Part shown: positions 12,501 to 53,739 of the stretch, piece by piece
How the letters are laid out: each line of letters begins with the position of its first letter
Position numbering within the stretch: the stretch's first letter is position 1
Assembly: GCA_965644265.1 (NCBI GenBank)
Contig: OZ286476.1
Span: 20,026,001-20,090,000 of the forward strand
Length of the DNA stretch: 64,000 bases
Reading direction: 5' to 3'
DNA from: Glycera tridactyla
Taxonomy: Eukaryota
The notes under the pieces: model-generated
Seen by the model: only the letters and a program-made list of their open reading frames with translations
Databases searched by the model: none
Told to the model about the DNA's origin: nothing
Program-made: the position numbers and the translations under genes

Positions 12501-13825
12501 GGTACAGGTTGGCCAAGTGCGCCAAGAGACCAGATCCGTAACTCTTGGGGACAAAACCATCACTCAGGTGATTGAACAGAGAGACGGTAGAGAGCCTGAA
12601 GTAGTATCAGAAGTATTCACTCTTCCAACTGGTGAACAAATTGTTCCTGATGAGGTCACAAAACAGACTTTGAAGGCAGTTATTAGTGGTGAGCAGCCAC
12701 AGATGTTGGCTCAAGAACAGACTACAGTTCTCGCCCCTGGTCAAATTCAGGAGATGGTCCTGATGCCACAAGAGGAGCAAGTCCAGATCGGCCAAGTGCG
12801 TCAGGAAACCAGGTCAGTTACTATTGGTGATAAGACTATGACTCAGGTTATTGAACAAAGGGAGGGCAGAGAGCCTGAAGTTATTTCCGAAGTTCTCACT
12901 CTCCCGACTGGTGAACAAATCCAGCCTGATGAGGTAACTAAACACATGTTTGAGGCACAGCTTAGAGGGGAACCACAGATGATGGTACAGGAGCAGGTGA
13001 CTACACTTGCCCCTGGTCAGGTTCAGGAAATGGTCATTGCACCTCAGGAGCAACAGGTATCACCTTTCCAGATCACTACTGAGATCCAACAAGCATCTAC
13101 GAGTCAACTTCCTACTGAAGTACATGAGCAATTGACCCCCCAGTCTGTAGAGGTCATCACAGAGGGTCTTGTTCCAGTTGCCCCAGAGCAAGTTGCACCA
13201 AGTCAAATAACTGTGGATACTACCCATGCAGGTGTAACTCTTCCACAGCCTGCTCAAGTGTATGAACAGGTCAGTCAAATGCCAACTGAAATGGCCACAC
13301 CTGAAGAAGAATTTCATGATGCACCTGAAAAGATGGCTCCTTCCACAGTACCTACAGAGACAATTGTTGCAGTCACACAGCAGCCACAAATTACTCAGAT
13401 TGGTGAGCAACCCGTGATTGATCAGCCCAAGGAAGTGATAACTGAGCAGGCACCACTTCAGCCAGAAGGTATACAGCCACAGGAAGTAGTTGCTCCCGCT
13501 GCTCAGCCACAGCCCCAAGTCACAGAACAAGTTGTTCTTAAGAAGGAACCAGTACCTGAACAACCAAAGCAAGAAGTCATGGAAGATGTCTCCATGATCA
13601 TTCAACAGCCTGTACAACCGCAGCAGGTGATGGAGGAAGTCTCCATGGTCATGGCACCAGAACAACCTCAACCAACACAAGTTACTGAAGATGTCACCAT
13701 GCAAGTAGTGCAGCAGCCGACAGAAGTAACCCAAGATGTGAGCATGATGATTCAACAAGAACAGAAGCCTCTTGATGTTATCGACTCGGCACAGATGACA
13801 GTGTTGACTCCACAGCAGCAGCAAG
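3551..13825 (+). CDS. Giant internal exon (10,275 nt, phase 1-1) encoding a ~90-aa repeat array
   Basis: 3446-aa ORF; TACTAAT branch-like motif 3517-3523; acceptor ctgcag|TT at 3550/3551; donor CAAG|gtatct at 13825/13826; length divisible by 3. Confidence 0.93.
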
Positions 13826-14420
13826 GTATCTACTACTGGCATGCTGCTTCCCTCAGCAGCGCATGAACATAGACAAGCTTGCATGGAGACCACCATCATG
13901 ACAATAAACCCATATTTGCAGAAATGCTACAATAGTATGCAGTTTTAACAATGTGTTTGAATGCTACAGAATGCCTTAGATAGATTTTTTTTCTTTCTTT
14001 TGATATTAAACACTTGAATGAGCACTTGTCAGTTGAATAACATCTTTTGTTTATTTTCATTTCATTTCATTTCAAATATTGATGTGCGCTTTGCATTTTA
14101 GTAAATATGTGGCACATGGTACATCAACCAAGTTGCATATTTATCTGTCAGTATTAGATGTTTTTTCTGTACGCAGTGCATACTAAAGTTTCACAGAAAC
14201 AAACTTAACTTGTACATGCTCTTTTAATGGTTTCATTCCATGTTATTGATGCCTATTTACTCACATAAATTTTTCATTCTTTTTCTGTTGCTATGTTGCT
14301 ATATGTTCATGCATCTTAAATCTTTCCGTCCTTGAATCATTCCATACTTAAGTATATATCACTGTTACTCCACCCTTGTTTCAATCATTTCAACCTTATT
14401 CTTTATGGACATACTCAACA

Positions 14421-23397: not shown

Positions 23398-23445
<48 letters not shown>

Positions 23446-29400: not shown

Positions 29401-32400
29401 ATATACACGCAAAGTAATAGACAAATATGACCAACAAATGCCTTCCCCCGGTGAGAATGGGATAAATCTTACAGAAACATCAATTGTCACCAATGAGATA
29501 CCATCTGAGATACCGCAGACCAACACTGTTACAGAGAGAGGGCGACATGCCATCATAACCAAAACAGAACCTAGTGTTTTGGAAACGATTAAAATTGAAG
29601 CTCACATCATCAGAGATGACAAAGCTTCACCAAAGTTTTCAGTTTTCAAATCTTCAACTGAAAAAGGATCAGAGGAAGCTGGTGATTATGAGGTCCAGAC
29701 ACGAGAGATCCATCCTGAGGAAGATGAGACCACATATGAAGTGAATGTCAGGCCCGAGACCCTCCTTGATTGGCAGCAACAACTCCAACGGGGCTCTCAC
29801 CTCAAATATGAAGCAGATAAAACCGTCAGAACAGAAGAAATGCAAATACTTGATGAGGTAACGGTTGAAACCAAGGTCAAGCAGGTCAAAACAATAAAGA
29901 TGGAGATGACGAATACAGGAGACTTTTCTGTTGAAGAAACCACAGAAGTTCAGACAGACACCGATATGTCTGAACACCGTCAGAGCAAAGAACGAGAACA
30001 AACTGTCATCCTCCACACCGTGGCTGATAAGTCAGAAGGTAGCCATCTTGACCTGCCCGAGATCATTCCAGCTCTCACTGGACGCAGTGATGCTTCAGAT
30101 TTTTCAGCGCGTAGTGACATTTCTGCACAGAGTGATCACAGTGGAGATCGATCATTCAGTAACCTTAGCAACCATGGTGCGTCACTAAGCAACCAGTCTG
30201 ACCACTCATCACTCAACAGCGAGAACGTCCCATTTGAGGAGTTCAAAACAATCATTGATGCATCTGATTCTTCTGAAGAGCCTTATGTGTGTATCGCAAT
30301 CAGTTCATATGACCCTGAGAATGCTGAGGTCATGTCACTACATGAAGGTGAAAAGGTCGAGGTACTCGACGATGTTCAAGATGACTGGTGGTATGTGCGG
30401 AAGCTATTTGACCAGCGGGAAGGATGGGTGCCGGGACAGTTCCTACGAGAACGCGACGTGTTTGAAAACATGGTGGACTCCCAGCTCAAGCAAGCTATAG
30501 ATACTCTGCCATCTCAATCAAGTAAGAACCTCCATAATGGATCCAATAATACATTTATAATGACAGCAGGAATAAGTTTTAGACAAGAAATCTCTGTAAT
30601 GTACATTTTTCATTGAAGCACAAGCACCACACTATCACAAGTGTTGTACAGTCCACTCTATCTATCTTCTGATCTATTTTTTCCTCCAATATTTCAAGAA
30701 TTAGGACTGCACAGGCTGTGGTGTAACTTTTCCTAAATTTCGGAAAAATTATTAGTGTTGCGCAGTAGAAATATCATCATAAGTCAAGTGTCTTAGTTTT
30801 ATTGTTTTATGGTCAAGGGCCCTACATTGGCCAAACTATTCAGGAGCAGGCTGGCCCCTGAGTTGATATTTTTGGTAGCCAATCAGTACATTGTGAATGA
30901 CAACATCTCAAAATTTCAGGCCCCTTGGTTTCTGACTTTTGAAATATGGTAGCCAGAGGGTAGATTTGGTAGCCATTGGCTACTCACAGGTAGCAAGATA
31001 AAGAGCCCTGTGGTTCATGTGAGACTATGCTCAAAGTCAAAATCCATCATCATATAATGAAATCCATCCATCCAATCAATGTTGATGGAAATTCTCGAAA
31101 ATCATCTTCATTCAAAAGTAACAAACGATAGAAAACTATTAGTATTATTAAGATACGAGGTTTATCCCTTGGCCTCCTGGATTGAAGAAACATTCAGCAT
31201 CAATTGATCAGTTAGTCAATCAATCAATCAATCAATCACTCAATCCTTGTCTTTAGCTCTTCATGTTAGGTTTCCATCCAGGATGGATCAAAAAGGTGAT
31301 GAGTGACGAGGGTCACAAGGAAAGTGGAGCTGAACTTGCTTTGATATATTAATCATTCAAATTTCTTGGCTCATGGTTCCTTTAATTGTGGAATATGTTG
31401 CACAGGGTTGAGGTTAGTGAGCAGTTGATTGCTTTGGCACTCTGGTTCTCAACAGATCCTTTTGTATCTCTATGGATGGTTCAGGTGTTTGAATATTGTC
31501 TCAGCACTCTATTCAAAAAGCATTTCAAATGTCATGTGCTTCTGAGTGTTTTGGAGATGGAACTATATCTTCTCAATCGAAGATCCAATGAGATAAGGAT
31601 TATATCTGTCAAAGGAAAGACCTTATAGATAAAATTATTTCATGTGATTAAAAACCATAGAGATTAGGTTTATTTCATGTTAATGGAAAACCATCTATAT
31701 AAGGATGATATCACATTTGAGGCATGTTTAAAGAAATAAGTGCAATTGTNNNNNNNNNNNNNNNNNNNNNNNNNNNNNNNNNNNNNNNNNNNNNNNNNNN
31801 NNNNNNNNNNNNNNNNNNNNNNNNNNNNNNNNNNNNNNNNNNNNNNNNNNNNNNNNNNNNNNNNNNNNNNNNNNNNNNNTGTTTGTGTGTGCATATTTAA
31901 ACCTTGTGAATACTAACATGTCTGTCTGTCCCCCGATCCTGTTATCCACAGAGGAAGATTTTGAGGGTGAACCGCTAGCCCCCGAGATCGGCCGGCCTCT
32001 TTCTGGCATGCATGCACCAGATGGCAGCGAGGTGCAGTTTGATTGCATTATCACCGGCAACCCCGCGCCAACCATCGCCTGGTTTCACGAGAGCTCTCTG
32101 ATCTCACCCGGGGACGATTTCATTCAGAGCTATGATGAAGAGAACAAAAAATGTACTCTTATTATCCGTGAAGTGTTCCCCGAAGACACTGGCCGCTATA
32201 CGGTTGTTGCGAAAAATCTTATGGGTACGGCAACCTGCTCTGCTGAGCTCATTGTCGAGGAAGGTGAGCGTAAATCTTGACTCTCACGAGTGTAATCTCA
32301 ATGGCAATCTCACAAATATCTACATTTAAAAAAATTGGAAGTTTTTCCCTCTGAGAGAAAGAGATTCACTGGGAATCTGGGTTCACCCATGGGAGGATTC

Positions 32401-34005
32401 CATGTTAATTCAGGTGAAATGAAAGTCTCGGTTTATTTGAATGCATGTTTTCCAGTTTGTGCTTATCATTGTTTAGATTTATTTAATCCATCTTGCATGG
32501 TGTGATTTTTTTAATGTGTGCTTGTAATTGTATTCCCTCCTGATATAATGGCTTTCTTAAGTGTTTGTTTTATGTGAACTTGAGAGTAGCATGGTTAGTG
32601 TTCCTTACCTTCTCAGGTATGAGTCCATGACCTTGGGACAATCATAAGAATTCACAAGATAGACCCTTGTAGTAATTCCACGATCAGGTCCACTATGTGA
32701 TGTCCCTATTCAAGTCCTTAGATATTGCTCATATGTTTGTGAATTAGTGTTGTGAAACTAGTTTCCCTCATTATCTATAAGCTAACTACTCAATATCATA
32801 TATATGTATAGTCATAGATTATTGATAAGTTGGTCTATGCTGTTGATATCTAGAATTTTACAGCTTTTTTATACCCCTGTTTTTTTCTCATGTTTTCTTG
32901 AATTGCTCAGCTGATGATGATTCATGTATTGTTCATTCACAATGAAAACTTTCTTACTCTATTTGTTAGTGTTAGGGAATAATATTAGGATAATGAGCAT
33001 CTGGACATATTTCAATTGATTTTGATATCATAATCAATGTTTAGTCAACATTTTGAAAAGAAAGATTTAATGTATGTGTGTTGACTGGTGTGGATATAGG
33101 AGTGGGAGATTTTGTATTGAATATGCTCGGAAAGCAGTCTCCTGTCTGCAGCAGGTCCTTTATCCCACTTGACAACCCTTCAGGTTCCCTATCATCTTGT
33201 GTTCAGGGTTTGTGAGAGTGATGCCTGCAGGGGAGAGAATATCCAGCTTTCATTAACCAGGAACACACGGCATACAATTATAATTGCGGTGTTTTTGGCT
33301 CAAGTAAAAGACAATATGGCTTATTTGTTGTTCTTCCTGTGATTTTTTTCAGCACCCGAGCAGCAGGTGGTGGAGGGTATGGCACCCCAGTTGGTGCAGA
33401 AACCTAAACCACAGGTCGTCAACGAGGGCGAGGATGTTACATTCGAATGTCGTCTCGTTGCTAACCCCCAACCAGAGGTTGGTCAATGTTTTATTGTTGC
33501 TTGACTGTTACTTGTGGATGATTATGTTTATCAAGCTGCCCTCATCTATTGCAAATCCATTAGATGCTTATTGTATGACAGCATTCATGATAGCCCTGAA
33601 AATGAACGTCTTATAATGGGTAGAACAACACATTTCAGTATACAGACAGAAAGCCAACACATTTTCATTGAATCTAANNNNNNNNNNNNNNNNNNNNNNN
33701 NNNNNNNNNNNNNNNNNNNNNNNNNNNNNNNNNNNNNNNNNNNNNNNNNNNNNNNNNNNNNNNNNNNNNNNNNNNNNNNNNNNNNNNNNNNNNNNNNNNN
33801 NNNNNNNNNNNNNNNNNNNNNNNNNNNNNNNNNNNNNNNNNNNNNNNNNNNNNNNNNNNNNNNNNNNNNNNNNNNNNNGTGAATTTCTTCCATGCTATTG
33901 TACATGGCTATCTAAGTATACACATGTATGCATGCACATGCATTTATACAGAAGTGTGTACAAGCGTATACATGCATGCATGGATATGCTCTCTGTCTGG
34001 CTCTT

Positions 34006-34045
<40 letters not shown>

Positions 34046-34078
34046 GGTCTCTTTCTCTGTCTCTCTGTCCACACAATA

Positions 34079-34117
<39 letters not shown>

Positions 34118-37100
34118 ACCACACACACACACACACACACACACCCCAGTTTTTCATGGCTTCTTTTTCATGCTTCAGATGCAATGGTGCAAGGAGGATC
34201 TGATTATCTTCACAACCGAAGGTCGTTACAAGGTCGAGGTGACACAGGATGTCCACATGTACACCGTAACCTTGATCATCTACAAGGTCACCCAGCAAGA
34301 TAGTGGAAATTACACTCTCACAGTCCGTAACGATTATGGTGAACTCAGAGCCAATGTGTCTCTTGCCCTTCACCGTAAGTTGAACATTTTATGTATTGAT
34401 TAATTCTCTTTACTTTGAATCCCATAAGTCATTACTCTGATTGAGAGAAATACAATGAAGTCTGCGCTCCTGATGCATTCACTTGTACTACATTTTGAGA
34501 TAACGCAGTCAGTTATATCATCAGTAGCACCATTTGTAGTTTTGTATGTAGGTAGAGGTGTTTCTGAGCTTACATTCATTTTCGACAAGCTTTCTTGTTC
34601 CTCATTACTCTGTGTTCAGGGCTTGTGAAAGTGATGCTCACATGGGACAGAGCATCCAGCTCTCGAATATCTGGAACATGCAGCATGCAATCAATCAATC
34701 AATCAATCAACCAATTAGTCAATTTCAACGAATCCTCGCCCCTACCTATATTTTCTCTGTATATTTTGCTGAAGTTACTGAAATTTCACTCCTGAAAAGT
34801 GCATCTTTCAATGGTGTTGTAAATCAGCTGGTTAATTCAGTGGCAAATGTCACCAAAGCCTTTTCCCCACAACCAATTCCATACTGGGCTTTTTGTAGAC
34901 CAAAATAGTATTGTCAAACCTGTATAAACCAGCCAGTCCCAGAAGGGCAGAGAGTGGTTGCTCAAGACATGTGAAGTTATTGTGAAATTATTCTAGCAGG
35001 AAATCAGAAGTTGTTACACATGGTTGCTCAATCCAAGTTCAACAGTAGTCTGTTATTTTTCCTTTTTTTTTTTGGGGGGGGGGGGGGACATTCATATTGC
35101 ACAATTCAATTACATGTGTTAGAAACACATTGAATCTTATATGTTTCTCTCTGATTTGCAGATGTTGAGAAGACAGTTGAGCTCCAAAAGTAAGTTATCA
35201 TTATTAGTTTTTTCTTCAAGTATATGCAATATATTGAATTTGTTCTGGTTTTGACTGTGTGCACAACACAACTTATAATTTTTGGTAAACTGCTCAACTT
35301 TTATGCGAATATTTATACTCGTTCACAAATAAAAGATCCATTACATGTATCCTCAAAAGAGTAGGGGATTAACCTCAGACAGAAATGCTTTTCTCTCACA
35401 GTATCACTCTTATAAAACAGTATAAATCTGGATTAAAATATCTGAATCAAAATCAGCTTAAAACTCTTAATTTTATGAACATTGATATCCCAACTCCCTT
35501 CCCTTTGCTGGAAGGTACATAAGGTTGAAAATGTATCATGTTCTCATATGAACTATCATTATGTGTTGTTAGTTCAGTTCATTTGCCTGGCATGCAAGGG
35601 CAGAGCCCAGGAAATGTTCAGCCTGCCTTTGTGGCTCAGTGGTGATGTACTGGGCCGGCGTGCGATGGGTCTGGGGTTCGAACACCAGTCCTACCATGCA
35701 GAAACGTTTCACCCTTCATCTTCGATCCTCCTTGGCAGGTGGTCTGATTTAGCCTACTCAAGTGCAGAAAGTGGACCTAAAACCTCAACATTTCCATTAC
35801 TGAAACATGAGATGCATACTGAAAAGATGCATAGAGGATTACAGTGGTAATGGCGTCAGTTTGAGCAGTTTACCAATGATCAAACCTAGCTTGTTACCAG
35901 AATGAATTCATATAGACATTACTGCCTGCTTTTAGATTGCTCCTTGCTTATGATATTGAGCCATATATTATGCTTTTGCATTATATTCACCAAATTGAGT
36001 CACTTAAATCACATGATGAGGATATGCCTTATCATTCAATCTATTACAGGTTTATATAACCCTGTCTGGATTGGAGGGATGTGAAGCATTACTCGGTCAA
36101 TCAAACAATCAATTCATAACAATGTATCTGATAATTGACCCATCCATTCAACCTAATAAAATCCTAGTATTTGGTGTCTTGGATGATATTGTAGAATATA
36201 TAAATGGTCTATCAGATGTACATTGTATTTACTGCTCGGCAATCATATATTTACCACTCTAGTATTTCACATTATGTTGTATACCTTTGTAATAATTCTC
36301 ACAAAATATCTGTTCCGAGGTATTATATGTCAGTGGGCCACCATCTCGCTGTGTTTATCCCACCAGCAATCACAGCCAGGTATCTCTGACCTGTAATAAA
36401 TGCATACCAAGAAATATCTATGTACAATGATTAAAAAAATTCATCACCATTGAATATCAAAAATGATTTTGTCGAATCATTAAAATGAAGATCAATATTT
36501 TGCTTGCATTAATTGCATGGTTTTGTTAGAAGTAGATTGTTTTGTTTCATTGTTGGGATTTGTATTTTGATGAGAATCATTCATGTATCTTTGTGAGCTT
36601 TTCTCTGCCTTTGCTCTCACAGTGTTCTACCAAAGACATCAATATATGTCTGTTATACTCTCTTAGTCAGTATGACAATTCTGCTAGCTTTTTAATTTTT
36701 CACTTAATGGAACAGGCTCGTATGATCCAATTCAGGCTGATCGCATTGGCATCTCAATCGAGCCCAGATAATGCACGATGGGGTACAGCCCCAAACAAAG
36801 TCTGAATACTGCTCTGCTTGGAAGCTACCTGTCTCCAGCGAGTAGCATATTAAGGGTAAATTGGAGGTTGTATATAGTACCACTATATGCATTGCAATCC
36901 CCCTATGACTTGCTACATGGGTGCATACCTATTTACTAGTCTCTGTTCCTAGTGTCGTGAGGATTTTGAATGGACCTCTCATGTACTTTGGTTATTGAGA
37001 AAATCAGCTTCAGTTGCATTCAACTGAATCTCAATTAAAACTTTTTCATCATTGATGATCGACTTACTATCATAAGATAATCCAAGATTCAGTGGTAAAA

Positions 37101-40100
37101 TAGTCTGAGGAGAGGATCGATAGAAATTGAATCACAACTTCTATCTGACATCCAGATGTTGGAAGGTGGAATAGAAATTGAATTACAACTTTTATCTGAC
37201 ATCCAGATGTTGAAAGGTGGAACACTGTTACAATCCTCACCAGCTTCTCTTATAATCACTCTCGCATTGACAGCACATTGCATGCTTTTCATCAGCATTC
37301 ATCATTATCTTAACCAATGACAGTCTTAACATTTTCATATTGCATGCATATCATTAACATACATTAAATCATGCATCTACTAAACCAATCAGGGACCCCT
37401 TTCTTCATGGAGCTACTTCAAAACTGTCAACTCTCTGCTCTGGTTTAAAAACTGACTGAATATGTAGCTGATAAATGTGTAATTTTCAAATTACCCTTTA
37501 TCAGGAGAAATGTGGATTCTCTCCGGAGTAATCGCTCACAAAAAGATTACCGAGGGATTCTGAAATACTCGGATGAAGCTCATGGAGGTGTTGGATATCG
37601 GACACAACAACGAGAGCAACAAAGACTTTTCAAATCCACAGATAAGGCAGAATATGATATGCCTTCTCAAAAAGTAGAAGATGGCGATTTTACCAGGATG
37701 TTGCATCGCAAAACTAAAACAAAGGAAGGCGTAAGATTTGAAACAGAACAAAAGGACTTTCGTTCAATTTTGAAAAAGTCCAAACCAACAAAGGAGGGTG
37801 TCATTCATGGCACAGAACAGAAAGACTTTCGAAGTCACCTCACGCATCCAACAAAAACCAAAGAGGGCATCCGTCATGAAACGGAGCAACTCGACTTTCG
37901 TGATCAGTTGAAGAATCCAATAGATACTAAAGTGGGTGAGACTTTTGAGTCAAAACAGAAGGACTTCCGTGGAGTACTTAAGGGGTTTGGTAAAACGCAG
38001 AGCAAGTAAGTACAACGCACAAAGAAGTCTGATTGTCATAGTAACCGAATCACAGATACACACTTGCACTTACATTGGTGCTTACACTCTTTGCAGTAGT
38101 TTTTCACTTTTAGTAATTTGCATGCTTTAGTATTCATAATTTAGCTTCAGATGTAGATTGATTTTTGCATGGTTTGAAGTTCACCTTACCTGGATTGAAA
38201 TCAATATTCATGGATTTGTTTATAAAAAACGGATTTCTCAAATTCCCAGTTGCTATATAGCCCATGCGGTTTTTGCTCACCTACTGTAGATATCTGTGAT
38301 GCAATGAATCTTGAGGTGCTTATGAATTCTAGTATCACACATCATATACAAATTGAGTGGGAACATATTCAAAGCAATATGGTATATATTTGGCTTTGGG
38401 ATTTTGTTTTCATTTAAGACACCTCAATCTATCTTCATATTGGTGTTCAAAGATGCATCCAGGGAGATTTCATGTCACTATCGGTGTATTGGATGCATCT
38501 TGGGAGTGCAGAATTTTTATTTTGGGGTACTCGAAGGCATCATATTCATATTTCACTATGTTGGTTTGATTGGAAGGATGTGGTAGTCAAACCTGTTCTA
38601 ATTAGCTGTCCTTGGGAATGGCAAAAAAAGGCACACTGTGAAAAGAACCTCTGGTGGGAACTCTAATTGTGACTCCTTGACCAGTGGTCAAGGAATTTTA
38701 TGCAGGAACAAGGTCCCTACTCTGTCAAATTTTGGGACAACCGCAATCCGAGATGTAACCCTGTGTTTGGATGGTATAGTGTTGTGATTTATGAATTCCC
38801 TGAAACTGCATTACTTTTTGAATTCAGCCTCTCCCCGAAAAGCAAAAACCAACAACTTGAGCCTGATCACGAAAAACGGATGATTTAAAAAAAAATGTGA
38901 TTTGTACATTTCAATGGTGCATTGTGAAACATAGTTTCATTCTAACGTTGAATCATGTCCGAGTTGTGGATTTCTTTCGTTGTGTTTAAGTGTTCATTTT
39001 TCCCTCTGTTTAGGACTGAGATGACAACAACGCAGATTATTCAGGGTCCAACTGACCAGGTTGTCCACGAAGGTGAGGCAGCGTATTTCTCTTGTGTTGT
39101 GCATGGTGTGCCTCCACCGCATGTTGCATGGTATTTTGAAGGCGACCCCATCGGCGACAGCGACATCTATCGGTTCGACGAGCATCCAGAAGAGGGTCGC
39201 TACACGCTGCACATCCCGGAGGCATTCCCCGAGGATGCCGGGGAGTATACTGTGCGCGTTCAGAATGAGCATGGTTCTCGTGAAGCATCCGCTACGCTCA
39301 CCGTCGAGGGTGAGTGTGTGGTCTTAGCTGTAACCCTTCCCCAAATGATTACAGAAAAACCCATCTTAGGAGACCAGCCCAAACGCTATGTACAAGCTGT
39401 CTCTCAAGACCGGTGGTCTCTCATTGGAGGTATACTGACCATACCGATAGAAAATAAGTAGCAGTGTCTCTGAAGAGGGCAGTTTCCCAAAACAGGGGTC
39501 TCTCAAAACAGGTTCCACTGTACCTACAGTATTATATGAAATTCAAATGATAGTGGAGTGTCAGTGGAGTAGAAATCACCATTCGATTTTCATGAAATTC
39601 CATCCTCTATTGGAGGTCCTCAAGAAGGAATCAAGAATTCTTTCATACCATATATAGGATACGTAACAGACCGTAAAATACTGGAAAAAATGCCAATAAC
39701 ATTTCTTTTACAAACTCATCCATGTGTGATGTGATGAGAAATGGTAATGAGCTGAGGCTCACCCAAAAACTTGATTTGATTTCCATTCTTGATACAGTAA
39801 AACCTGTCTTGGGAGACCGCCCCAAATGCCAACGAAAGGTGGTCTCTCAAGACAGGTGGTCTCTCATTAGAGGTATATTTGACTATGTCAATTAGAGAAG
39901 AGCCGATAAAGAGTGGTCTCCCATTAGAGGGTGGTCTCCCAAAAGAGGGGTCTCCCAAGACAGGTTTCACTGTAGTATCAAAAACAGGGGGGAAAATTCC
40001 TTCCGTGTTTCTTGGAGGTAGGTCAAGGTGAGCTGACGGTCACATCCATTGGCAACACTTTTACTTCCTCATCATCTTGTGCTCAGGGTTTGTGAGAGTG

Positions 40101-43100
40101 ATGCCTGCAAGGGACAGATCATCCAGCTCTCACAGACCCGGAATTTCATCCCACAAGAAGGAATCAGGAATTCTTTCATACCATACCCATATATGGTCAC
40201 CCTCATATTTCCCATATATAGGATAAGTAACACACAGCAAAATACTGGGAAAATGGCAAAATCCTATGGGTTGATGGATGCCATTGTATTCTACTCAATC
40301 AATCAATCAATCAATCAATCATCCATCTTTCGTATACCCATTAGCAGATGTAATCTCTCTGAAAAATTGGTCACATTGGGAGTAGATGACATGGCTGGAT
40401 GGAAATATTCTACAATTATCCTACAATATTAACAGAGGTTGATTTATTTTATGAGACTCAGTCCTCAGTGAAGGATTTTTCATGATGTGATCAAGTAAGT
40501 TGAAGTAAGATATCTATGCGTTGTAGAATCCCGATTCTTGTTGTTGTCCATGCATGTTTCCCTCGTACGTATTGAAGTGTTACTGGCACCTACCTCATGC
40601 AATGATATGTGTGAAAGCAATTTTATTTCAATTCATTCTTCAAACTAGTAATTTTAGCATGTTGACTTGCTTATAATCAAGAAATTTCTTTGGAGTGTGA
40701 AATTCGACTGAACATGACCATCCAAATCTGCATGTGTGTCGTTATGTGTAGATAAACTGGCATGTATAGTACGTCCAAATGTTTATCTGTTTCTTGATTC
40801 AGTATTGTAGGTTAGACTCCCTTTGCTTGGTGTACCTTACCTTTTAATTGAATTATTTCTTGTGATACAAATAATCCTGAATTTGTCACATCAAATCTCT
40901 ATTTAGCAGATCTATTGAGAATCAAATAATGTTCTAATACTGGACAGATCCTGTCTGCACTTCTATTAGTCCAAGCTATGATTTGGTCCATCTCGTATTT
41001 ATAACATTGCACATGTTCTTTTCTACTTGAGAAAATGGATGATAGACCTCTTTCCCACCAGGGGTGTTGCAGTCATTTAGAATCATAATGATATGACTTC
41101 ATGATCTAATTTACCCCTGCAATTTCCAAGGCCATTAAGATACCTTTCAGTTTAGAAACAATTCTCTCATGAACTACACCATCTATGAACTCCAAATTTG
41201 TCTGACACCTAGAGGGATAAAAATTCCCAGGAGCATTTTCCAGATGTGCAAAATATTTCTTGTCTATCTTCACATCTGCACTTGCACTGATTTATTTACT
41301 ATATTCATTGTTTATTCTTACAAACATTTTATATGGCCGTATTCTCAATACTTTTTTGGACAGATCACCGTGAATCAAATCAAATCAAAAGTTAGGAGCT
41401 ATCAATTCGCATCTAAGCTCTCCTTGAATGAATATTAACAGTTTTCGCTAAGATACTCTAGAAATAAATCCATGTCTATTTCATGGATGAGGTTAATGAT
41501 TGTTGTTTTATCTCATTTCAGAGCTGTTTGCGGAAACCACAACTGAGGTGATTGGTCACCAACAAGAGGAAGCAGCTGTCAAGATTCAGGCGGCGTTCCG
41601 CGGAATGCAGGCTCGTGAGAAAGTGAAGGTCATGAAGGCCGAACATGAGCAGGTCAGAGACTCGGGCCACAAGGTCACAAAAACAACACCCGCACCGTTT
41701 GAGTTGTTATACCAGCATGTTTCACCCGTTTACGATTCCTCAATGCATGATGGGGAATTCAGCGAGGATGGAGTCGAGGTGGATGACTTACCGTCACCAC
41801 CACCACTTCCTCCTGACGATTTCACTCTGCCCTGCATGACTGACGTTGATTTCCCACCACCACCTCCCAGTCTTGACCAAGTTCTCCAGGAGGTCATCTC
41901 GCCATCTAGTGAGGAATCGCTGACATCATTCAATGAACATAACCAGCAGAGCAGGACAGATCCTAAGTCTTTAGGTTTACCTGATAAATGCAGCACAAAT
42001 CAGCTACAGAAAGAGAGGGAGAATGTGATGTTACCTGAACAGACTCTTGGAATCAGTAGTGAGTCGGATGAGGGTGGTGTATACATGGACATGTCAGGCA
42101 CCTATATGATGCCAGTGAGAATGGAGCACAGGACTGAGATTCACCGAGTAGCCTTGATACCAACCACTCCTGATTCAGAGGTACGATAGTCAACATTAAA
42201 ACGGCATCCAAACTATAAATATATTAAAAAGCACGTACAACCATGAATATCCAAACTCTGTGCCTTGTGCTGAAAGGCACAAAACAGATGAAAAAAGCAC
42301 ATACAGCAATTTATAATGTGCCCAAAAGCGACATACAACTGATTGTACACGGATAAGATGACAGTTTTTGGCTCATAATATGTTTTAAGGCCCATACAGT
42401 TCCCTGAATTGGGAAATTTCTGCATCAAAACGATAGCTCATTTATGAGAGGGAAACAAGCTCAGGAATATGAGACATTTGGACATGCCTCACAGCATCTC
42501 ATAGAAAATTTGATTGGATTTTGCTCTCAGATCACCTAATCAACTGTCCCAGATGTTTACGACTATATTAGGAAACCTGCGACAACACTCACCCTACATG
42601 ACCACCTACACTTGGAGACCTCATCTGCAGGGCAGGTTCTTTTTCTGAGATAGTGAAATTTACCCCCAAGATGACATTTAGGGAGGTCTCTTGTTGCAAG
42701 TTGCAAGTTTTCAATTTTCCTAACGAGATAGTCTGAGACCATGTCTTTTTGACAAAACGTGGCTGTTATATTGGAATTCGATCTAGGTGAATGATTCAAG
42801 TTCTTCACATGGATTTTCACTTTTCAATCCTGTATTGTGTGATTTCCTCACATTTGCTCTTTGCTTTTGCATGAATACATTTATACAGTCGAACCTCCTC
42901 TAAAGACCACCCTGAACTGCGACCATGGTACCATTTTCTACAGTAAATGACCTCTCTATAAAGACCACCTCCCCATAAAGGCCACTTTTTGGTGCGACCG
43001 AAGGCAGTCTTCATAGGGAGGTTCGACTGTATGTTTGTTTTTCCTTTTGACTCATTCATGGCTGTGATAAGTGATCAACATGAACTGTGGAAATCATTTG

Positions 43101-46100
43101 AACCCAGAACCATTCTGGAAACAAATTTACCATGTTCAGACTAGCTTCAACATGGCATTTTTGATGTCCTCTGCAAATTTCAGGCACAAAAGTTGCCCTA
43201 AAGATGGATTAGAAATAGAGATTCAAATTTCGGAATGAGTAATAGAGCTGAATTTTGGTATTTGTCACTTTTTATCAGTTACTTCAGCTATGCTAAGAGT
43301 GGTTGAGAAATTGCAGCATTTGAATGAGTCCTGCATGCAATTGGTTTGTGGTTTGTTTATTTCAGTTTGTGCATGTTGGTGATGATGACGAAAAGGTGGT
43401 GCTTCCGGAAGCCATTGTGGATTCTGGGAGTCAGACTGATCCCTCTGACGATGAACACCATTACGAGAACTCCCCTCCAGCCTTTCATGATAGACTCACA
43501 ACCTTAATGAACCGTCCAAAACTTATCTCTGGATTTTCCATTGAATCTGATGTATCAGCTGTCTCGACAAATACATACGAATCGTTTGCATCTGGGCCTG
43601 TCAAAGATTCAGAAGAAAGTGCATCTGCAATTGATCTCAGCGATGAACGAATACAAGACTTTGATGACTTTGCCATTGAAACTTCTGGCGATGTATACGA
43701 AGATATACCGTCTGATATTATAGATTCTCATATTGTGCAAAACGAAACCCCGCCTGAAATTCCACCCAGATCTGTCAACAGTGTGTCTATAACTGATGAA
43801 GAAAAACTCAAAAATAAAGAAATATTGGAAGAAAGAGAAGCAGAGGCAGACTCTGATAGTGACAGTGATATTAGTAGTCTCTATGAGCATATCAATGCAG
43901 CACGACAGCAAATGCAACGCCAGGAGTCTTTCCAACCACTCATCAAAATATCTAGCCCAGCTGACGACACACCCTCTGATACCTCAAAAGAATCTTCGCA
44001 AGAGGATTTTTTGGAGACGCATGAGGAAGAAGATGCAGCCAGTTCATATGGTTCTGTAGTTACCGTAGTGGAAAAGACAGTTGTTGACCTCAACAAAGAA
44101 TCTGATTATGTTAATGTTGATTTTGTGAACAATGTAAAAAAGCCTCCATCAGAAACAAACAGTCATGAATCTTCAGAGGATGATTACCTGGAGCCTATTA
44201 GCTCTGATAGTTCTCAAAATTTGGATGAAAGTGAGCTGTACGAGCCGGTGAATTTATCGGATGTAGATCTGTGGCATATTGCTGATCTGCTAGTCTCAGA
44301 AGCTATGAGATCAGCTTTGGAAGAGTATCGCAACGCAATGCCACACTTACTGAAGGATTCATTGAATGTTGATATAAAATTACACTATGATGACGAAGAG
44401 GGGGACTATGTGGAAATAGTAGATAAGCCTGATGATGGGTTCTGTAAGAATGAAGCAGATCCCGACTATATCGATATAATAACTCAAGATGAATTTGTCT
44501 CAACGATGCATAGGGATAGGAATGATCCGGATTATATTGAAATAATCAGTAAGGACGAGTTTCCTTCAAAACATTTATCACAATTGCTATCTTGTGGTGA
44601 TGAAACGAAGTTGGATGAGCCTTTGAAAGATGACAGTCAGACACTGGATATCATAACTCCTGTCCAATCGCAGAAAATCTTCCTCACCCAAAGAGGAGTA
44701 ACTGAGATGCATGCTGGGAAGAATATTGCAGCATGGGAGGTGGCTGAAAAGATTGTTAACATCGCTACGGAGAATGCATTGTATGAATTTTCATCCCACC
44801 GGGTAAGATCCTGCATGTTCTGACATTCCTGCTTGCATTTTTCTGCCTTTGTCTTGACACAAAATCCATCCCTCACTATTTTCTGTCCTCAAATCTTGAC
44901 ACACTCCTGCTTTGACATAGATGTGAAATTGTGTTTAATCCCTATTTACACATGTATACTTGGAAGAGAATTGTATTCACATGCACATGCACCCAATATT
45001 TTGCTCACAAATACACACGCACAAGAAAAAAATAGTTATGTACAGATATTTTGAGGATGGGTGAGTTGCAGTTAGCAATCTAGTAAATTTGGTTGCTGAT
45101 TAGGGAGAATCAATATTTACACATGAATGAAAAACCACATGCTGTTCTCAAAATAATGGTCATTTCCAGTATCATGATACTCTCTCAATCTGCCAGTATT
45201 TCATGAATTGTCATGTGCATTGAAATAATACACAGTACTTTGTTTTACACAGTAATTGTTTTAATGTCTTCTCAGCCCAAGCTGGATCATTTAAAACAGA
45301 GAAAATGAGTCAATTCTCAAATATTGTTTGAACAATATTCAGATGAGCAAGCCAAGCCCCATTCATCGGTGTCACATGGAAAACAGGATTTTATGGTGTG
45401 ATCAGACTCAGTGATTTGTATTGGGTGTATCACAAATTCTCTCTTCGATGCTTAACCGAGAGGTGTGTCTGAACTGTTAGCAACTTCCACTTGACAACCT
45501 TTGTGGCTGTCTTATCTCATGCATGCTATGACTCCAGCCAACCACGCAACCTGAATCAGTTGATTCTTGTTACAGGGCATTTCATATTTGCATTTTGGTA
45601 ATGAACTATTTATCAGGGTTAACTTTTATATTAACATTTGAGGACTGATGTTTTCAGGTGCCGGGTGAAGCGCCGTTCTTCGTCACAGTTCCTGCTCCAA
45701 TCAGTGTAATTGCTGGTGACACCGCTGTCATTGAGGCGACAATTGGTGGATCGCCGCGTCCAAACGTCACCTGGTTACATCACAACATGGAACTGCCGAT
45801 TAGCGAGCGCTACTTGTAAGTACAACTTTCAATCTCATCCTGTATTACATTATCAAAATATCCCAAAATATTCAAGCAATATGGTCCTCATCCCTTAACT
45901 GACACCTATGTGTATATTCATTCTCATGTGGAATGTATCAATTTTACTTTTGTCTCCTTTATTCTTGTAAATGATCCCCCAACTACCAATATAATGCGAT
46001 ATTCAAGTGTTTGTATTTCCATCTTTACCTGGAATGTATCGATTTTACTTTTATGTCTGTTATAATAGTAAATGATTATCAAGCTAAATGTAATATCATA

Positions 46101-47958
46101 TTTTAAGTGTTTGACCCACACTCTTGACCTATTCAAGTATTTTATCACCTTCCCCACCTCTTGGTCCTTGTTGGGAGATCCAGCTAGATATTATGTGAAA
46201 TATTTGAGTGTTTTACCCACACTCTTGACCTTTTCAAATATTTCACCACCTTCCCCACCTCCTGGTCCTTGTTGGAAGACCCAGTCCTATGAGTTTGAAG
46301 CCTTACCTTCTTTAAACGTCAGTGTCAAATGAATCTGTCAAGTACATGTATATAAAATTAAGTAAAATCAGTATGTAATTGATAAATAGCTGCTTTGAGT
46401 TGATATATATTGATTTCAAATATACTGTAGAGATGTCCTGATGATCAGATAAGATAATGCAAATTGTATGATGACTTGTAGGTTTAGCCTGGGCCCCGAA
46501 CCCAGCTTCCAAGTCCTCAGGTAATGGGGATATCAAAGTGTGGATGTGTTCTTCACAATGCATATATCACAAATGCTTAGCTCAGAATGAATATCTTATG
46601 TTCTGTAGTCATAATATTGTAGGAGCTTATTTGCTTATACTGCCACATAGTCAGTATGAGCTAGTTGTTGTTGAATAGCAAAGCTTGACATTGTTTCTGT
46701 AGATATGCATCATTTATTTGATGGCTAATTGTTTGCACAATATATCAAATTTTATGATTTTTGATATTTTTATCGGTGACTTAATGGTCATCAGAAATTT
46801 CATCAGCTAAATTTCCCAAAATGATCAAATGAGGAAATCATGAGATTTTTCTGTATTCACTCAATTGAAATATTGGTTGACCATATATCTAATCAGTCAT
46901 TCAATATTTTCAGTCACTTGTAATCTACTATGGATTGAAGCAATGTAAAATACCACTTAGTTATTCAATTCATCGATCACTTCTTGATGTTATTCACAAA
47001 AGCAGTGATCCTATATATTCTCCAACGACAACCGCCAAAATCGGGTGGAGATCGGGGGTTGGAGATTGTGCCGATCTCCAACGCTGTGCGACGAGCCTAG
47101 TTTTCTGCATCGCCCCTGGGTGGCGCTTTATGTATTCGCCCGACCTACGATTTTTCGAATGTGAAGACGTTTCACACAATTATACCATTTCTGTCAGGAA
47201 TATGGAGGATATAGATGAACGAATTTGATGAGAAATCAGTAGATATAATTTCCTTTCGTTATAACTCATGCCTCGGTCATTTCCTCGAATGAAAAAAGAT
47301 TGAAATGTCACACATATATAATGATCTGTGAGTGTTCATGACCCTAAAATAGAAACCATTTGGACGCTGGCTGAAGCTTTGAAATCGAACAAATTCTTCA
47401 TAGAATACACACGTCAAACTCAATCTTTATTTTGATAATAGTTACACAAAGCCAGCTCCCGCCATTTTGTTCAATAATACTGTTATCGATGTCTGGGCTA
47501 TTTATTTCCATTATACAAGTCGTTGGAGAAAAACAAGAACCAATGAACGTGGGCGATCGTCACATCTCCAACTTGGCAGCCGCCAGCAGCGTCCGTCACT
47601 CGGCCTGCGGCCTCGTGACGGACGCCGCTGGCGGCTGCCTCGTTGGAGATTGTGCCGATCGCCCACGCTCATTGGTTCTTGTTATAATCATTCAATTTAT
47701 CTTGACTGCTGAATTAGCACAAATTTTGCTGTACATACAGATTTTGCACAAATTTTTCTTTCTGTTTATCAATTGTATGCTAGCCTTGGAAGTATGTACA
47801 GATATTGAAATTTTGCATCCCAATCTGTACACTGATAATGATATACATGTATTTCTAAAAATCAAAAAGATTATATGTTGCATGTCACCATATCGAGCTT
47901 GATCACATCAGGCACATTTTTACCTCGTCTCAACGAAGTTGAGGGGAGGTATTGCGGT

Positions 47959-48012
<54 letters not shown>

Positions 48013-51000: not shown

Positions 51001-53739
51001 TAGGGGGTTAGTTTCAGGAAATTTGGTCAGGTTTCAGGAAATTTTGTCTTAATGCACTTGCATCACTGAAAATGCCGTTGATGGGTCCATCAAGGTCAAT
51101 TTGAGGCATGTAGGGATTTACCAGAATAGTCAGCTACTTTAAGTTGACGTCCTCTCTGGTTCCCCATCATCTTGTGTTCAGGGATTGTGTGAGTGATGCT
51201 TGCAAGGAACTGAGCATGTAAGTCCCATAGATCAAGAATGCACAGTATACATTATAATTTGGGTTGATTCATGCCAGCTAACACAATCTCAATCGACCAA
51301 CCAACATCCGGTAATGGCAGAGCTGTACTGTGTTATGCGATGTTACATGTTTTGCATGTCTTGTTCAAACGATTTGTGTCTGTGACTCAATAATGATATG
51401 ATTTTTGTGTGTATTGTCAACATTTTCCATCGTGCATATCATCCAACATTTTCAGAAACTCCCCAAATGTCAACTCTTATTTGTGTTAATAATATACAGT
51501 ATAATGAGCACAATTATCATGAAAATATAGGACATCATTCCATGATTAATATTCATGGAGGAGCATTCAAAGGGGAAATGAGACAATTACCAGACAGAAA
51601 TCCATCTTGGCCCCATTTTTTCCAGTTATAGGCTCGAGATCCCGCCATATTTTTGGCTACATCTACATCGTTGCAGCTTTCATTGACTGGTGCAGTATTC
51701 TGTGAAATTATTAAGGATCAGGAATGTCTGCTCAACATTGTCAACATTATTGTTGGGAAATCTTGCTTGATGTCTCCTATTCAAAGGAAACAAATAAGGG
51801 ATATCCTATGATCATTTTGCAGTAATGATTGGGGAAAAATGCTTTCTCCACGGCATATGTAAATCCATTGCTTTTTCCATGACATCTGTCAATCGACTTT
51901 TTATCAAGATTCTTCATGTAGGTGTGGCTTTGCACAAATATGCGCAGTTCAGATACAGTACAATTTTGTACTAAGCATGACTTTTATTATGCAATTACAT
52001 TGTACTTGTTCGAGGCGACATCTCTTCATATTTCCCATCCAAGTATTTATCACTATGCTCGACCTGCAGTAAGCAAGAACTTGTTCTAAGTGCAGATATG
52101 CCATCATTAGATTCACTCTAATCATGAAGAGTAGGTAGAGGTGTGTCTGAACTGTCAGCTACTTTTATTTGACACCTTTGAGGTCCCCATCATCTTGTGA
52201 TCAGGGTTTGTGAGAATTATGTCTGCAAGGGACAGAACATCTAGCTTTCATTGACCAGGAACACATGGCATACATAATCCTGTGGGTTGATACAGGCCGT
52301 TAAACCTCAAACAAGCAAACAAACAAGCCTATTGATTTCTTTGTATCCGTGCTTGGAAGAATTACATCCGTGTTTGCTTTCACTGTACTTAGATGTTCGA
52401 CACTCACTTACCTGTTTTGTTTTGTTTTTTGTTCTGCAGCTCAACTTACACAGAAGAGATGACAGTTTCACTCACAGTTCACAATGTCACCCTCGAGGAT
52501 CAAGGCGACTACACAATCCGACTCTTGAATGACTTCGGAATGTCGGAGTATACTGTCACTCTGACGATCGACGTTGAGGCGCCAGCATTCATCATGCCAC
52601 TGCATGACGTCGAGATCACACTCAGCCAGACCGTAACTCTGGAGTGCACATTCGCTGGACGTCCCAAGCCTGAAATCAAGTGGACAATCTTTGGTATGGA
52701 AATTATCCAGTCGGAGAAATACATCATTGAAATCGAGGAATACACGACGCGATTACATATTACGAGTGTCACGCTGGATGACACGGAAATGACGTATACT
52801 TGTATCGCTCGCAACCCCGGTGGCCAAGCGGAGACAAGTGCTCATCTCATCCGTCCACAAGGTTTGTTAACGAGTTGCCGTTCTGAGTTGGGTACGCAAT
52901 GGCCCGTTACCCCATGCATGTTATGCATTTAGTGGACCCATCCCATTGATCAAAAAGAGCTTGCATGTTTAGGACTGTTACACCCATTCTTGCAACTTAT
53001 TTCCCATGCAGTTTGACTACTTGTGCATATTTGTGTAATTCTACCAAGACTTAGTTGTGCTTGTGTGACCCTCTGGCTTCCATATTTTCTGGATGTCAGA
53101 TACTGCATGAAGCAGCTCTTTTAACATGAAGATGCTTGCCTAAACTGAAATATGTCAAAATTTATGAGCTGTTGTAAATACTGCCTGCTTTCTGTTGGAT
53201 ATATGCAGATTTCAACAAATTAACAAGTATAATTTGCCCACTGTTCCATTCGATTTCATACAAAAAATCACGTTAGATTCATGAAAAACAAATTTTGATT
53301 GTACAGCTACTCAATATATGGTATTACCTCTGCTGTAAGTCCATCTCCTATATTTGAGATGAACAATGGCGTATCCTCACTTTCGGGTTATGTTAGTAAG
53401 AAATTATCATTTTACTACCTTATCCCATAAGGAAATGAAATCAAATAAGAAACTATGTTACCCTACAATTATGTCAGTCAAGAGGATGTGGAGCATTCCT
53501 ATATTCTATGCCTTTCAACCAAAGAATTCATGATCATGCAAAACATTTCCATCATGGGAATATTGATGAAACCTCATGAGTTATGCTCAGCATTAGATCA
53601 GACCTCATATTGAATCGAATCTTGCGAAGGAATGTATTTTCCAACTGGGTGTTGTACACATTGTAAATCCCTGACCTGTACGCTTACATGTTTCTCATAC
53701 AGGGTTGCATCCAGAGGGACACTAGGGCCATGATGCCAC

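What the first reader, a model, noticed from the sequence alone, without database searches (positions are those of the whole stretch)
44269..44781. Two AKAP-like amphipathic helices (putative PKA anchoring)
Seen: LWHIADLLVSEAMRSAL (44269-44319) and AAWEVAEKIVNIATENAL (44728-44781) fit the A-x-x-(I/L)V-x-x-A-(M/x)-x-x-A register. Both resemble the D-AKAP2 helix AWKIAKMIVSD(I/V)MQQA as I recall it. Established: such helices dock PKA R-subunit D/D domains, some AKAPs also carry FFAT motifs, and PKA controls molluscan catch via twitchin. Inference: this protein localises PKA in muscle.
Basis: partly seen in the sequence, partly recalled or inferred. Interest (0 to 1): 0.7.

Follow-up and report, generated by a model that had tools for sequence, protein, structure and literature searches.

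The report
PKA-anchor-like helices in optional titin exon
An optional, transcribed exon of a giant titin-like muscle gene encodes two short helices that closely resemble the helix by which the anchoring protein D-AKAP2 holds protein kinase A, so this isoform may tether the kinase to the filament, but binding is untested and I could not check conservation.

Summary
Both peptides are in the sequence as described. They lie in one phase-0/0 exon (43366-44802, 479 aa) of a giant titin/obscurin-like gene with SH3, I-set Ig and IQ exons.

**For the anchoring reading**
- Helix 1 has a hydrophobic residue at all 8 docking positions of the published AKAP register. Helix 2 has 7 of 8.
- They hold the exon's only two Trp, in the same register.
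- Scored against the D-AKAP2 helix, they rank 1 and 2 among about 128,000 peptides of the six-frame window.
- A profile of the two helices ranks the D-AKAP2 kinase-binding peptides first and second among 177,635 solved-structure sequences, though E is only 0.29 and 0.76.

**Expression**
- RNA contigs show the exon is spliced in together with an extension of the IQ exon, giving an in-frame optional 655-aa cassette.
- Another form skips it.

**Limits**
- Likeness to AKAP-IS, Ht31 and RIAD is at chance level.
- No AKAP Pfam model matches, and AlphaFold confidence is low.
- No homologue of the exon was found, so conservation could not be tested.

**Verdict:** plausible PKA (RII-type or dual) docking helices, confidence 0.45. 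The catch/twitchin link is unsupported. The scan had noted this same stretch before (s1-322493, s1-322443), not other DNA.

The parts
44266..44319 (+). Helix 1, 18-residue register DLWHIADLLVSEAMRSAL (exon residues 301-318); docking face L-I-A-L-V-A-M-A
   Evidence: 8 of 8 hydrophobic docking positions; score 40 against the D-AKAP2 helix, rank 1 in the window; hydrophobic moment 0.385 against an exon mean of 0.206; DSSP helix at exon residues 302-332 in AlphaFold models (pLDDT below 50).
44728..44781 (+). Helix 2, AAWEVAEKIVNIATENAL (exon residues 455-472); docking face A-V-A-I-V-A-T-A; ends 7 codons before the exon's donor site
   Evidence: 7 of 8 docking positions (Thr at position 14, Ile on the polar face at 12); score 34, rank 2 in the window; hydrophobic moment 0.34-0.35; DSSP helix at 454-477.
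43366..44802 (+). Optional exon, 1437 nt, 479 aa, phase 0 at both ends. Acidic (D 60, S 59, E 54) and mostly disordered; carries both helices and six acidic Tyr motifs
   Evidence: Splice signals read. RNA joint 42178/80 to 43364/66 in 3 of 4 runs and contig cover ending near 44800. Composition. AlphaFold mean pLDDT 37.6.
41653..42180 (+). Optional 3' extension of the IQ exon (176 aa), used together with the exon above; proline-rich, with DFPPPPPS and GGVYMDMSG
   Evidence: Internal donor at 41652/41653 and distal donor at 42180/42181. The joints show both donors in use. Motifs.
41522..41652 (+). Part of the IQ exon (calmodulin-binding-type IQ motif AAVKIQAAFRGMQAREKV) that the cassette-skipping form keeps, upstream of the internal donor
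   Evidence: Pfam IQ at 23.3 bits, above the cut-off of 20.3. Acceptor AG at 41520-1. Contigs of all 4 runs join 41649/52 to 45655/58.
45658..45815 (+). Next exon downstream: first half of an I-set Ig domain. It is the acceptor of the cassette-skipping joint and is in frame with both 41652 and 44802
   Evidence: translation VPGEAPFFVTVPAP..., GTAAGT at 45816. The second half of the Ig domain and a further Ig domain are at 52393-52932.

Best explanation
The two peptides are docking helices of the AKAP type, carried by an optional 655-residue splice cassette of a giant titin-like muscle protein. In isoforms that include the cassette, each helix would lie across the hydrophobic groove of the four-helix docking/dimerisation bundle formed by the N-termini of a PKA regulatory-subunit dimer. 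It would bury positions 2, 5, 6, 9, 10, 13, 14 and 17, as the D-AKAP2 helix does. Two helices about 150 residues apart in a disordered acidic linker could hold two holoenzymes, or one with higher avidity. That would place the kinase on the filament within reach of nearby substrates. Candidate substrates in the same molecule are the RRES sites in the core of the roughly 92-residue repeats. Splicing would decide whether the filament anchors the kinase. Helix 1 has Leu at position 2, which is the substitution that makes the D-AKAP2 peptide RII-selective. Helix 2 has Ala there, as in dual-specific wild-type D-AKAP2. Neither has the F/Y-A start of type-I-selective anchors. I therefore expect RII-type or dual binding. 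What is shown: the sequences, the register, the D-AKAP2 likeness, the predicted helicity, the transcription and the optional splicing. What is inferred: binding, stoichiometry, isoform preference and substrates.
For: The peptides are present and in frame. The register is met in 8 of 8 and 7 of 8 positions, using the positions given in PMC12083921. The helices rank 1 and 2 in the six-frame window against the D-AKAP2 helix. Shuffle P is 0/5000 and 0.009 against AKB-RII (peptide from Table 1 of PMC4526808). The top two PDB hits of a profile of the two helices are D-AKAP2 peptides from complexes with RI-alpha and RII-alpha docking domains. The only two Trp of the exon share one register, the helices share 7 invariant residues while their flanks are unrelated, and the DNA is 24/48 identical, so this is not a recent duplication. 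Both are predicted helices in an otherwise disordered exon, with no Pro or Gly in the core and net charge -2. The exon is spliced to the IQ exon of a gene with SH3 and Ig exons. There are 11 RRx[ST] sites in the repeat exon against 0.7 expected. Dual-helix AKAPs are known: SKIP and AKAP220 (PMC12083921).
Against: There is no binding evidence of any kind. No homologue of the exon was found: the word searches and the exhaustive HMMER scan of 1.84 billion representatives found none. The scan gave only two spurious hits to multi-cystatin repeat proteins. Conservation of the helices is therefore unknown. The PDB E-values of 0.29 and 0.76 are not significant on their own. Similarity to AKAP-IS, Ht31 and RIAD is at chance level. 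No Pfam AKAP or RII-binding model matches, even at E up to 10. AlphaFold confidence is below 50 everywhere near the helices. Helix 2 has Thr at docking position 14, and its hydrophobic moment (0.34) is below that of known peptides (0.42-0.50). The AKAP pattern is degenerate, and such helices can serve other partners (PMC3494852).
Confidence: 0.45

Rival explanations
1. The helices are real docking helices but for a partner other than PKA. One candidate is a non-kinase protein with an RIIa- or DPY-30-type dimerisation/docking domain, as for the two helices of flagellar RSP3. Another is an EF-hand domain (alpha-actinin EF3-4 or a calmodulin/light-chain-like protein) that reads a 1-4-5-8 hydrophobic pattern. 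A third possibility is that the two helices pack on each other or on a neighbouring domain.
For: PMC3494852 reports that the AKAP-type helices of RSP3 bind spoke proteins rather than PKA. The i, i+3, i+4, i+7 pattern of both helices is generic to amphipathic helices. An IQ motif lies in the neighbouring exon, so light-chain-like proteins may be nearby. The helices share conserved residues with each other, which argues for a common partner but does not name it. The 1-4-5-8 rule for alpha-actinin EF3-4 is from my own knowledge.
Against: The closest matches in the whole solved-structure set are specifically PKA-binding D-AKAP2 peptides. All eight docking positions carry small or aliphatic residues, as in D-AKAP2 and AKAP-IS. 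The net negative charge argues against binding to acidic calmodulin-like domains (inference).
Confidence: 0.3
2. The helices have no specific partner. They are chance amphipathic segments in a fast-evolving, weakly constrained disordered exon, and they were noticed because the reader looked for the D-AKAP2 pattern.
For: No homologue of the exon is detectable. In the one relative found, the disordered first ~620 residues of the nearby SH3 exon are already unalignable. Of the 19 differences between RNA and window listed in the exon, 11 change the residue, which points to weak constraint. The loose AKAP pattern occurs 0.55 times per shuffled exon.
Against: The two best D-AKAP2 matches of a 128,000-residue six-frame space fall 460 nt apart in one expressed exon. 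They share Trp, Ala, Val, Ala, Ala, Leu and Glu in register with unrelated flanks. The shuffle tests give 0/5000 and 0.009.
Confidence: 0.2
3. The stretch is not protein-coding, or is not part of the muscle gene, and the open frame is accidental.
For: None beyond the lack of homologues.
Against: There is a 479-codon open frame with canonical AG and GT boundaries in phase 0/0. GT..AG joints to the IQ exon are seen in contigs of 3 runs, and contig cover stops at the donor.
Confidence: 0.02

Closest known systems
D-AKAP2 (AKAP10) A-kinase-binding helix (PDB 3IM4, 3TMH, 2HWN) and its derivatives AKB-RII / AKB-RI
   Same: It has the same 18-residue register with Trp at position 3, Ala at 6, Val at 10 and Ala at 17. 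The docking faces are A-I-A-I-V-V-M-A in D-AKAP2, L-I-A-L-V-A-M-A in helix 1 and A-V-A-I-V-A-T-A in helix 2. These peptides are the top two PDB matches of the helix profile. Helix 1 has the Leu at position 2 that defines AKB-RII.
   Different: Only the helix is alike. D-AKAP2 has RGS-like domains, and its single helix sits near the C-terminus followed by a PDZ ligand (my own knowledge). Here there are two helices in a disordered optional exon of a titin-like gene, and Pfam found no RGS domain in any of the ten stretches it scanned. The charge is reversed on the polar face (net -2 against +1). This is likeness of a motif, not shown homology.
Dual-helix AKAPs: SKIP (SPHKAP) and AKAP220 (AKAP11)
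   Same: They have two R-subunit docking helices in one polypeptide (PMC12083921), which allows two anchored holoenzymes.
   Different: According to that paper those proteins arose in vertebrates. SKIP is type-I selective with an F/Y-A start, which neither helix here has. There is no sequence or domain relation.
Flagellar RSP3, an 'AKAP' with two amphipathic helices
   Same: It has two AKAP-type helices in a structural scaffold protein.
   Different: The RSP3 helices bind RIIa- and Dpy-30-domain spoke proteins, not PKA (PMC3494852). It is the model for the main rival reading.
Optional unique sequences of vertebrate titin (N2B, N2A) and sarcomere-associated AKAPs (myospryn, synemin, mAKAP); named from my own knowledge, not tested here
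   Same: These are alternatively spliced, disordered inserts between Ig domains in the elastic part of a giant filament. They act as signalling hubs, and PKA regulates titin stiffness in vertebrates.
   Different: In vertebrates titin is a PKA substrate, while separate proteins do the anchoring. In the papers searched I found no report of a docking helix inside a titin-, obscurin- or twitchin-family protein.

Membership tests
AKAP (functional class: anchors of PKA regulatory subunits) | 14-18-residue amphipathic helix with hydrophobic side chains at positions 2, 5, 6, 9, 10, 13, 14, 17 (PMC12083921) | tested here: met
   Helix 1 meets 8 of 8 positions. Helix 2 meets 7 of 8 (Thr at 14). Hydrophobic moments are 0.385 and 0.34-0.35 against an exon mean of 0.206.
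AKAP (functional class: anchors of PKA regulatory subunits) | The segment actually forms an exposed helix | tested here: inconclusive
   Two single-sequence AlphaFold runs put DSSP helices at exon residues 302-332 and 454-477 in an otherwise disordered chain, but pLDDT is below 50. There is no Pro or Gly in the cores.
AKAP (functional class: anchors of PKA regulatory subunits) | Direct binding to the R-subunit docking/dimerisation domain, lost on proline substitution or competition by Ht31/AKAP-IS | not testable with these tools
   This needs an overlay, pull-down or ITC assay, or a multimer structure prediction. The structure tool here folds single chains of window sequences only.
AKAP (functional class: anchors of PKA regulatory subunits) | A targeting part that fixes the anchor at a cellular site | tested here: met
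   RNA contigs join the exon to the IQ exon. The other exons scanned on the same strand hold SH3 and I-set Ig domains and giant repeat exons.
AKAP (functional class: anchors of PKA regulatory subunits) | Helix conserved in orthologues while the flanks drift | tested here: inconclusive
   No homologue of the exon was found. The only relative of the gene found (P0003/P0004, ENA assembly) is served without DNA.
AKAP (functional class: anchors of PKA regulatory subunits) | Match to a curated AKAP or RII-binding family model in Pfam | tested here: not met
   There is no such hit for the exon at E up to 0.1 or for the helices at E up to 10. Very short models are poorly served by HMMER's filters, so this is weak negative evidence.
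D-AKAP2 / AKAP10 orthologue | RGS-like domains plus one C-terminal kinase-binding helix (architecture from my own knowledge) | tested here: not met
   Pfam finds no RGS domain in the exon or its neighbours. The two helices are internal to a giant Ig/SH3/IQ gene.
Type-I-selective AKAPs (smAKAP, SKIP and others) | F/Y at position 1 and Ala at position 2 of the helix (PMC12083921) | tested here: not met
   Helix 1 starts D-L and helix 2 starts A-A.
Titin/obscurin-type giant muscle protein | Arrays of I-set Ig domains with SH3 and IQ modules and long unique or repeat exons | tested here: met
   I-set at 78-95 bits in three exons, SH3 at 43 bits, IQ at 23.3 bits. There is a 3446-aa repeat exon. Kinase and Fn3 parts, if any, lie outside the window and were not tested.

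The most novel reading that the evidence does not exclude
One splicing decision turns an invertebrate titin-like filament into a kinase scaffold. The 655-residue optional cassette would bring two PKA docking helices, an Ena/VASP-type FPPPP ligand and a set of SH2-type tyrosine motifs into the elastic region. Anchored PKA would then act on the many RRES sites of the same molecule's spring repeats and tune stiffness isoform by isoform. This would be the first titin-family protein that anchors the kinase itself rather than only being its substrate.
Probability: 0.25. Interest if true: 0.65.

Novelty: new member of a known kind. Interest (0 to 1): 0.4.

Why it matters
PKA tunes the stiffness and relaxation of muscle filaments in vertebrates (titin N2B) and molluscs (twitchin); this is established knowledge and was not tested here. 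How the kinase is brought to the filament is known only for separate anchoring proteins. A docking site built into an optional exon of the filament itself would make anchoring a property of the splice isoform. It would also give a simple, testable handle, because two short peptides are enough for binding assays. More than fifty AKAPs are already known and the motif is degenerate, so without binding or conservation data this remains a candidate of moderate interest.

Tried and rejected
- **Homologues of the exon.**
  - The word search with the whole exon found nothing.
  - The word search with residues 292-479 at E up to 10 found nothing.
  - The exhaustive phmmer scan gave two hits at E 5e-9 and 9e-7. 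Both are multi-cystatin repeat proteins matching exon residues 66-115 and have no helix counterpart, so I rejected them as spurious.
- **Relative through the SH3 exon.**
  - P0003 and P0004 (one ENA sample, two contigs) are 56% identical over the last 335 residues and unalignable before that.
  - Their loci are served without DNA, so the orthologous region could not be read.
  - The gene lists show non-domain ORFs of 233 and 311 aa, where our IQ exon would sit by my reading of the order of ORFs. Within 10 kb downstream they show no ORF of about 480 aa.
- **Solved structures with single helices.** phmmer with each helix alone found nothing. Only the two-sequence profile worked.
- **Pfam.**
  - Scans of the helices and of the exon extension gave nothing relevant.
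  - A sub-threshold PB1 match is recorded under things noticed.
- **Structure prediction.** Both AlphaFold runs were single-sequence and of low confidence. I did not run fold searches on them, because matches to such models are meaningless.
- **Published regular expression for RII-binding helices.** A text search for it found nothing usable. The loose pattern used is from my own memory of Hundsrucker et al. 2010 and is marked as such.
- **Literature.** Searches for anchoring helices in titin, obscurin or twitchin found no relevant paper. The 'twitchin' hits were the word 'twitching'.
- **Tools and limits.**
  - The joint from 44802 to the next exon was not among the joints listed. The reads tool is capped at one call, so the 3' junction rests on the GT signal, the frame and the end of contig cover.
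Full report
**The observation.** Both lie in the frame of one long open stretch. Its true exon limits are an acceptor AG at 43364-43365 and a donor GT at 44803-44804. This gives an exon of 43366-44802, 1437 nt, 479 codons, phase 0 at both ends. The product is acidic and serine-rich (D 60, S 59, E 54 of 479). It has only two tryptophans, and both are the Trp of these two peptides.

**The gene.** The window's + strand holds a giant muscle-type gene.
- A 3446-codon repeat exon lies at 3526-13866, and further long exons follow.
- An SH3 domain lies in the 27668-30616 exon.
- I-set Ig domains lie at 31885, 38955 and 52393.
- An IQ motif lies at 41500-42189.
- The exon after ours (45658-45815) encodes the first half of another I-set domain.

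This is a titin/obscurin-like architecture. Earlier, unchecked notes of this scan call it a titin-like gene of an annelid-like worm that continues for hundreds of kilobases. I did not verify the taxon. The only relative I could find is unnamed.

**Expression and splicing.** Four small public runs of one study hold the exon. They were only guessed to be RNA. Their contigs carry GT..AG joints, and I take those joints as the evidence that the contigs are spliced RNA.
- One joint, seen in all four runs, links 41652 to 45658. It skips the rest of the IQ open frame and the whole exon.
- A second joint, seen in three runs, links 42180 to 43366. The IQ exon therefore has an internal donor (CAG|GTCAGA at 41652/3) and a distal donor (GAG|GTACGA at 42180/1).
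- All boundaries are phase 0, so 41653-42180 plus 43366-44802 form an in-frame optional cassette of 655 residues.
- Contigs with the skipping joint have depth 15-26 and contigs with the inclusion joint 4.6-5.9. This hints that inclusion is the minor form, but the tool warns that contig depth cannot rank forms.
- Contig cover stops at about 44800. The joint from 44802 onward was not among those listed.

**Fit to the AKAP helix.** A 2025 analysis of 3,520 AKAP helices places the conserved hydrophobic docking face at positions 2, 5, 6, 9, 10, 13, 14 and 17 (PMC12083921).
- In that register helix 1 (D1...L18) has L, I, A, L, V, A, M, A, which is 8 of 8.
- Helix 2 (A1...L18) has A, V, A, I, V, A, T, A, which is 7 of 8.
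- D-AKAP2 has A, I, A, I, V, V, M, A and AKAP-IS has I, L, A, I, V, A, I, A.
- Neither core has Pro or Gly, and both have net charge -2.
- Their hydrophobic moments (0.385 and 0.34-0.35) are 1.3-1.7 SD above the exon mean. They are somewhat below those of known peptides (0.42-0.50).
- Two single-sequence AlphaFold runs put helices at exon residues 302-332 and 454-477 in an otherwise disordered chain, but pLDDT is below 50.

**Is the likeness more than chance?** I used peptide sequences printed by tools, not recalled ones. They came from Table 1 of PMC4526808 and from the PDB alignment.
- Against AKB-RII (D-AKAP2 with Ala to Leu at position 2), helix 1 scores 37, which no shuffle of 5000 reached. 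Helix 2 scores 24 (P = 0.009).
- Against AKAP-IS, SuperAKAP-IS, Ht31 and RIAD the scores are at shuffle level.
- Against the natural D-AKAP2 helix, the two peptides rank first and second (40 and 34) among all 16-mers of the six-frame translation of the window, about 128,000 residues. The next best are 28 and 27, in non-coding frames.
- A profile of the two helices was searched against all 177,635 distinct solved-structure sequences. It returns as hits 1 and 2 the D-AKAP2 peptides crystallised on the RI-alpha and RII-alpha docking domains (3IM4/3TMH and 2HWN). The E-values are weak, 0.29 and 0.76.
- The two helices share W, A, V, A, A, L and E in register, while their flanks are unrelated and their DNA is only 24/48 identical. 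The likeness is therefore not a recent duplication.

The resemblance is real and specific to the D-AKAP2 type. It is a motif likeness and does not show homology: Pfam finds no RGS domain or AKAP family model.

**Conservation.** This could not be tested.
- Two word searches found nothing.
- The exhaustive scan of 1.84 billion representatives found only two multi-cystatin proteins, which are spurious.
- The SH3 exon does find a relative, P0003/P0004. It is 56% identical over the last 335 residues, but the preceding ~620 disordered residues cannot be aligned.
- Failure to find the equally disordered helix exon is therefore expected and says nothing about the 18-residue helices.
- Within the species, 8 of the 19 listed differences between RNA and window in the exon are silent and 11 change the residue. 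This suggests mild constraint. None of the listed ones falls in a helix, but the list was truncated.

**Most likely mechanism (confidence 0.45).**
- In cassette-containing isoforms, each helix docks into the groove of a PKA R-subunit dimer. The filament then carries one or two holoenzymes on a flexible acidic tether. [quoted passage not shown]
- Leu at position 2 of helix 1 is the change that makes the D-AKAP2 peptide RII-selective: 2.7 nM for RII-alpha against 2.5 uM for RI-alpha.
- Helix 2 keeps Ala there, as in dual-specific wild-type D-AKAP2. Neither helix has the F/Y-A start of type-I anchors. I therefore expect RII-type or dual binding. This is inferred from vertebrate subunits.
- Candidate substrates in the same molecule are the RRES sites in the repeat core, with 11 RRx[ST] against 0.7 in shuffles. 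They may be structural instead.
- All binding steps are inference.

**Rivals.**
- *Another partner (0.3).* The helices may dock a different protein. Candidates are an RIIa/DPY-30-domain protein, as for the two helices of RSP3 (PMC3494852), or an EF-hand domain. They might also pack intramolecularly.
- *Chance (0.2).* They may be chance helices in a fast-evolving exon.
- *Non-coding (0.02).* This is contradicted by the RNA joints.

**Comparison and novelty.** This would be a new member of the known class of AKAPs. It is not an AKAP10 orthologue. In the literature I could search, I found no paper describing an R-subunit docking helix inside a titin-, obscurin- or twitchin-family protein. That library is incomplete.

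**Context.** The rest of the cassette looks like a signalling hub. It has an FPPPPP Ena/VASP-type ligand, a YMDM motif of the p85-SH2 type, YVNV of the Grb2-SH2 type, and a duplicated DPDYI(D/E)II motif. This fits a scaffold reading but proves nothing about PKA. The scan had already noted this same stretch under two other headings (s1-322493, s1-322443).

Noticed in passing
window 41653-42180 (+): The optional extension of the IQ exon is proline-rich. It holds DFPPPPPS (the Ena/VASP EVH1 ligand type), LPSPPPLPP, and GGVYMDMSG, which looks like the YMxM docking site of the PI3-kinase p85 SH2 domains. The motif classes are from my own knowledge.
   Followed up: partly
window 43366-44802 (+): There are six acidic tyrosine motifs of the form Y-[IVEL]-[DENP]-[IVL], among them YVNV (Grb2-SH2 type) and a duplicated DPDYI(D/E)II(T/S)xDEF pair 22 residues apart. 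They could be SH2 or LIR-type ligands. Another first-stage note (s1-322493) reads the exon as a phosphotyrosine platform.
   Followed up: partly
window 44353-44469 (+): There is a sub-threshold Pfam PB1 match (17.8 bits, cut-off 23.6) over exon residues 330-368. The sequence IKLHYDDEEGDYVEIVDKPDD resembles the acidic OPCA motif of PB1 domains and is modelled as a beta-hairpin just after helix 1.
   Followed up: no
window 3526-13866 (+): The core of the roughly 92-residue repeats reads (K/R)(V/I)RRESRT. This gives 11 RRx[ST] and 22 [RK][RK]x[ST] sites, against 0.7 RRx[ST] in shuffles. They are possible PKA-type sites, or simply conserved structural residues.
   Followed up: partly
window about 42900-43030 and 45459-45502: Short intron stretches on both sides of the exon attract RNA contigs at summed depths of 30,000-48,000, and some contigs join them to each other. 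They are probably copies of an abundant transcribed repeat.
   Followed up: no
relative's loci (ENA ERZ26052378; locus coordinates): The related assembly shows a similar order of ORFs in less space: an SH3 ORF, an I-set ORF, then non-domain ORFs, the largest of 233 or 311 aa (I take that one for the counterpart of our IQ exon). One contig also shows I-set ORFs further on. On neither contig is there an ORF of about 480 aa in the 10 kb after the SH3 ORF. The optional exon may be shorter, farther away or absent there.
   Followed up: partly
window 23440-23600, 31760-31890, 33680-33880 (approximate): Runs of N appear as X in the ORF translations.
   Followed up: no
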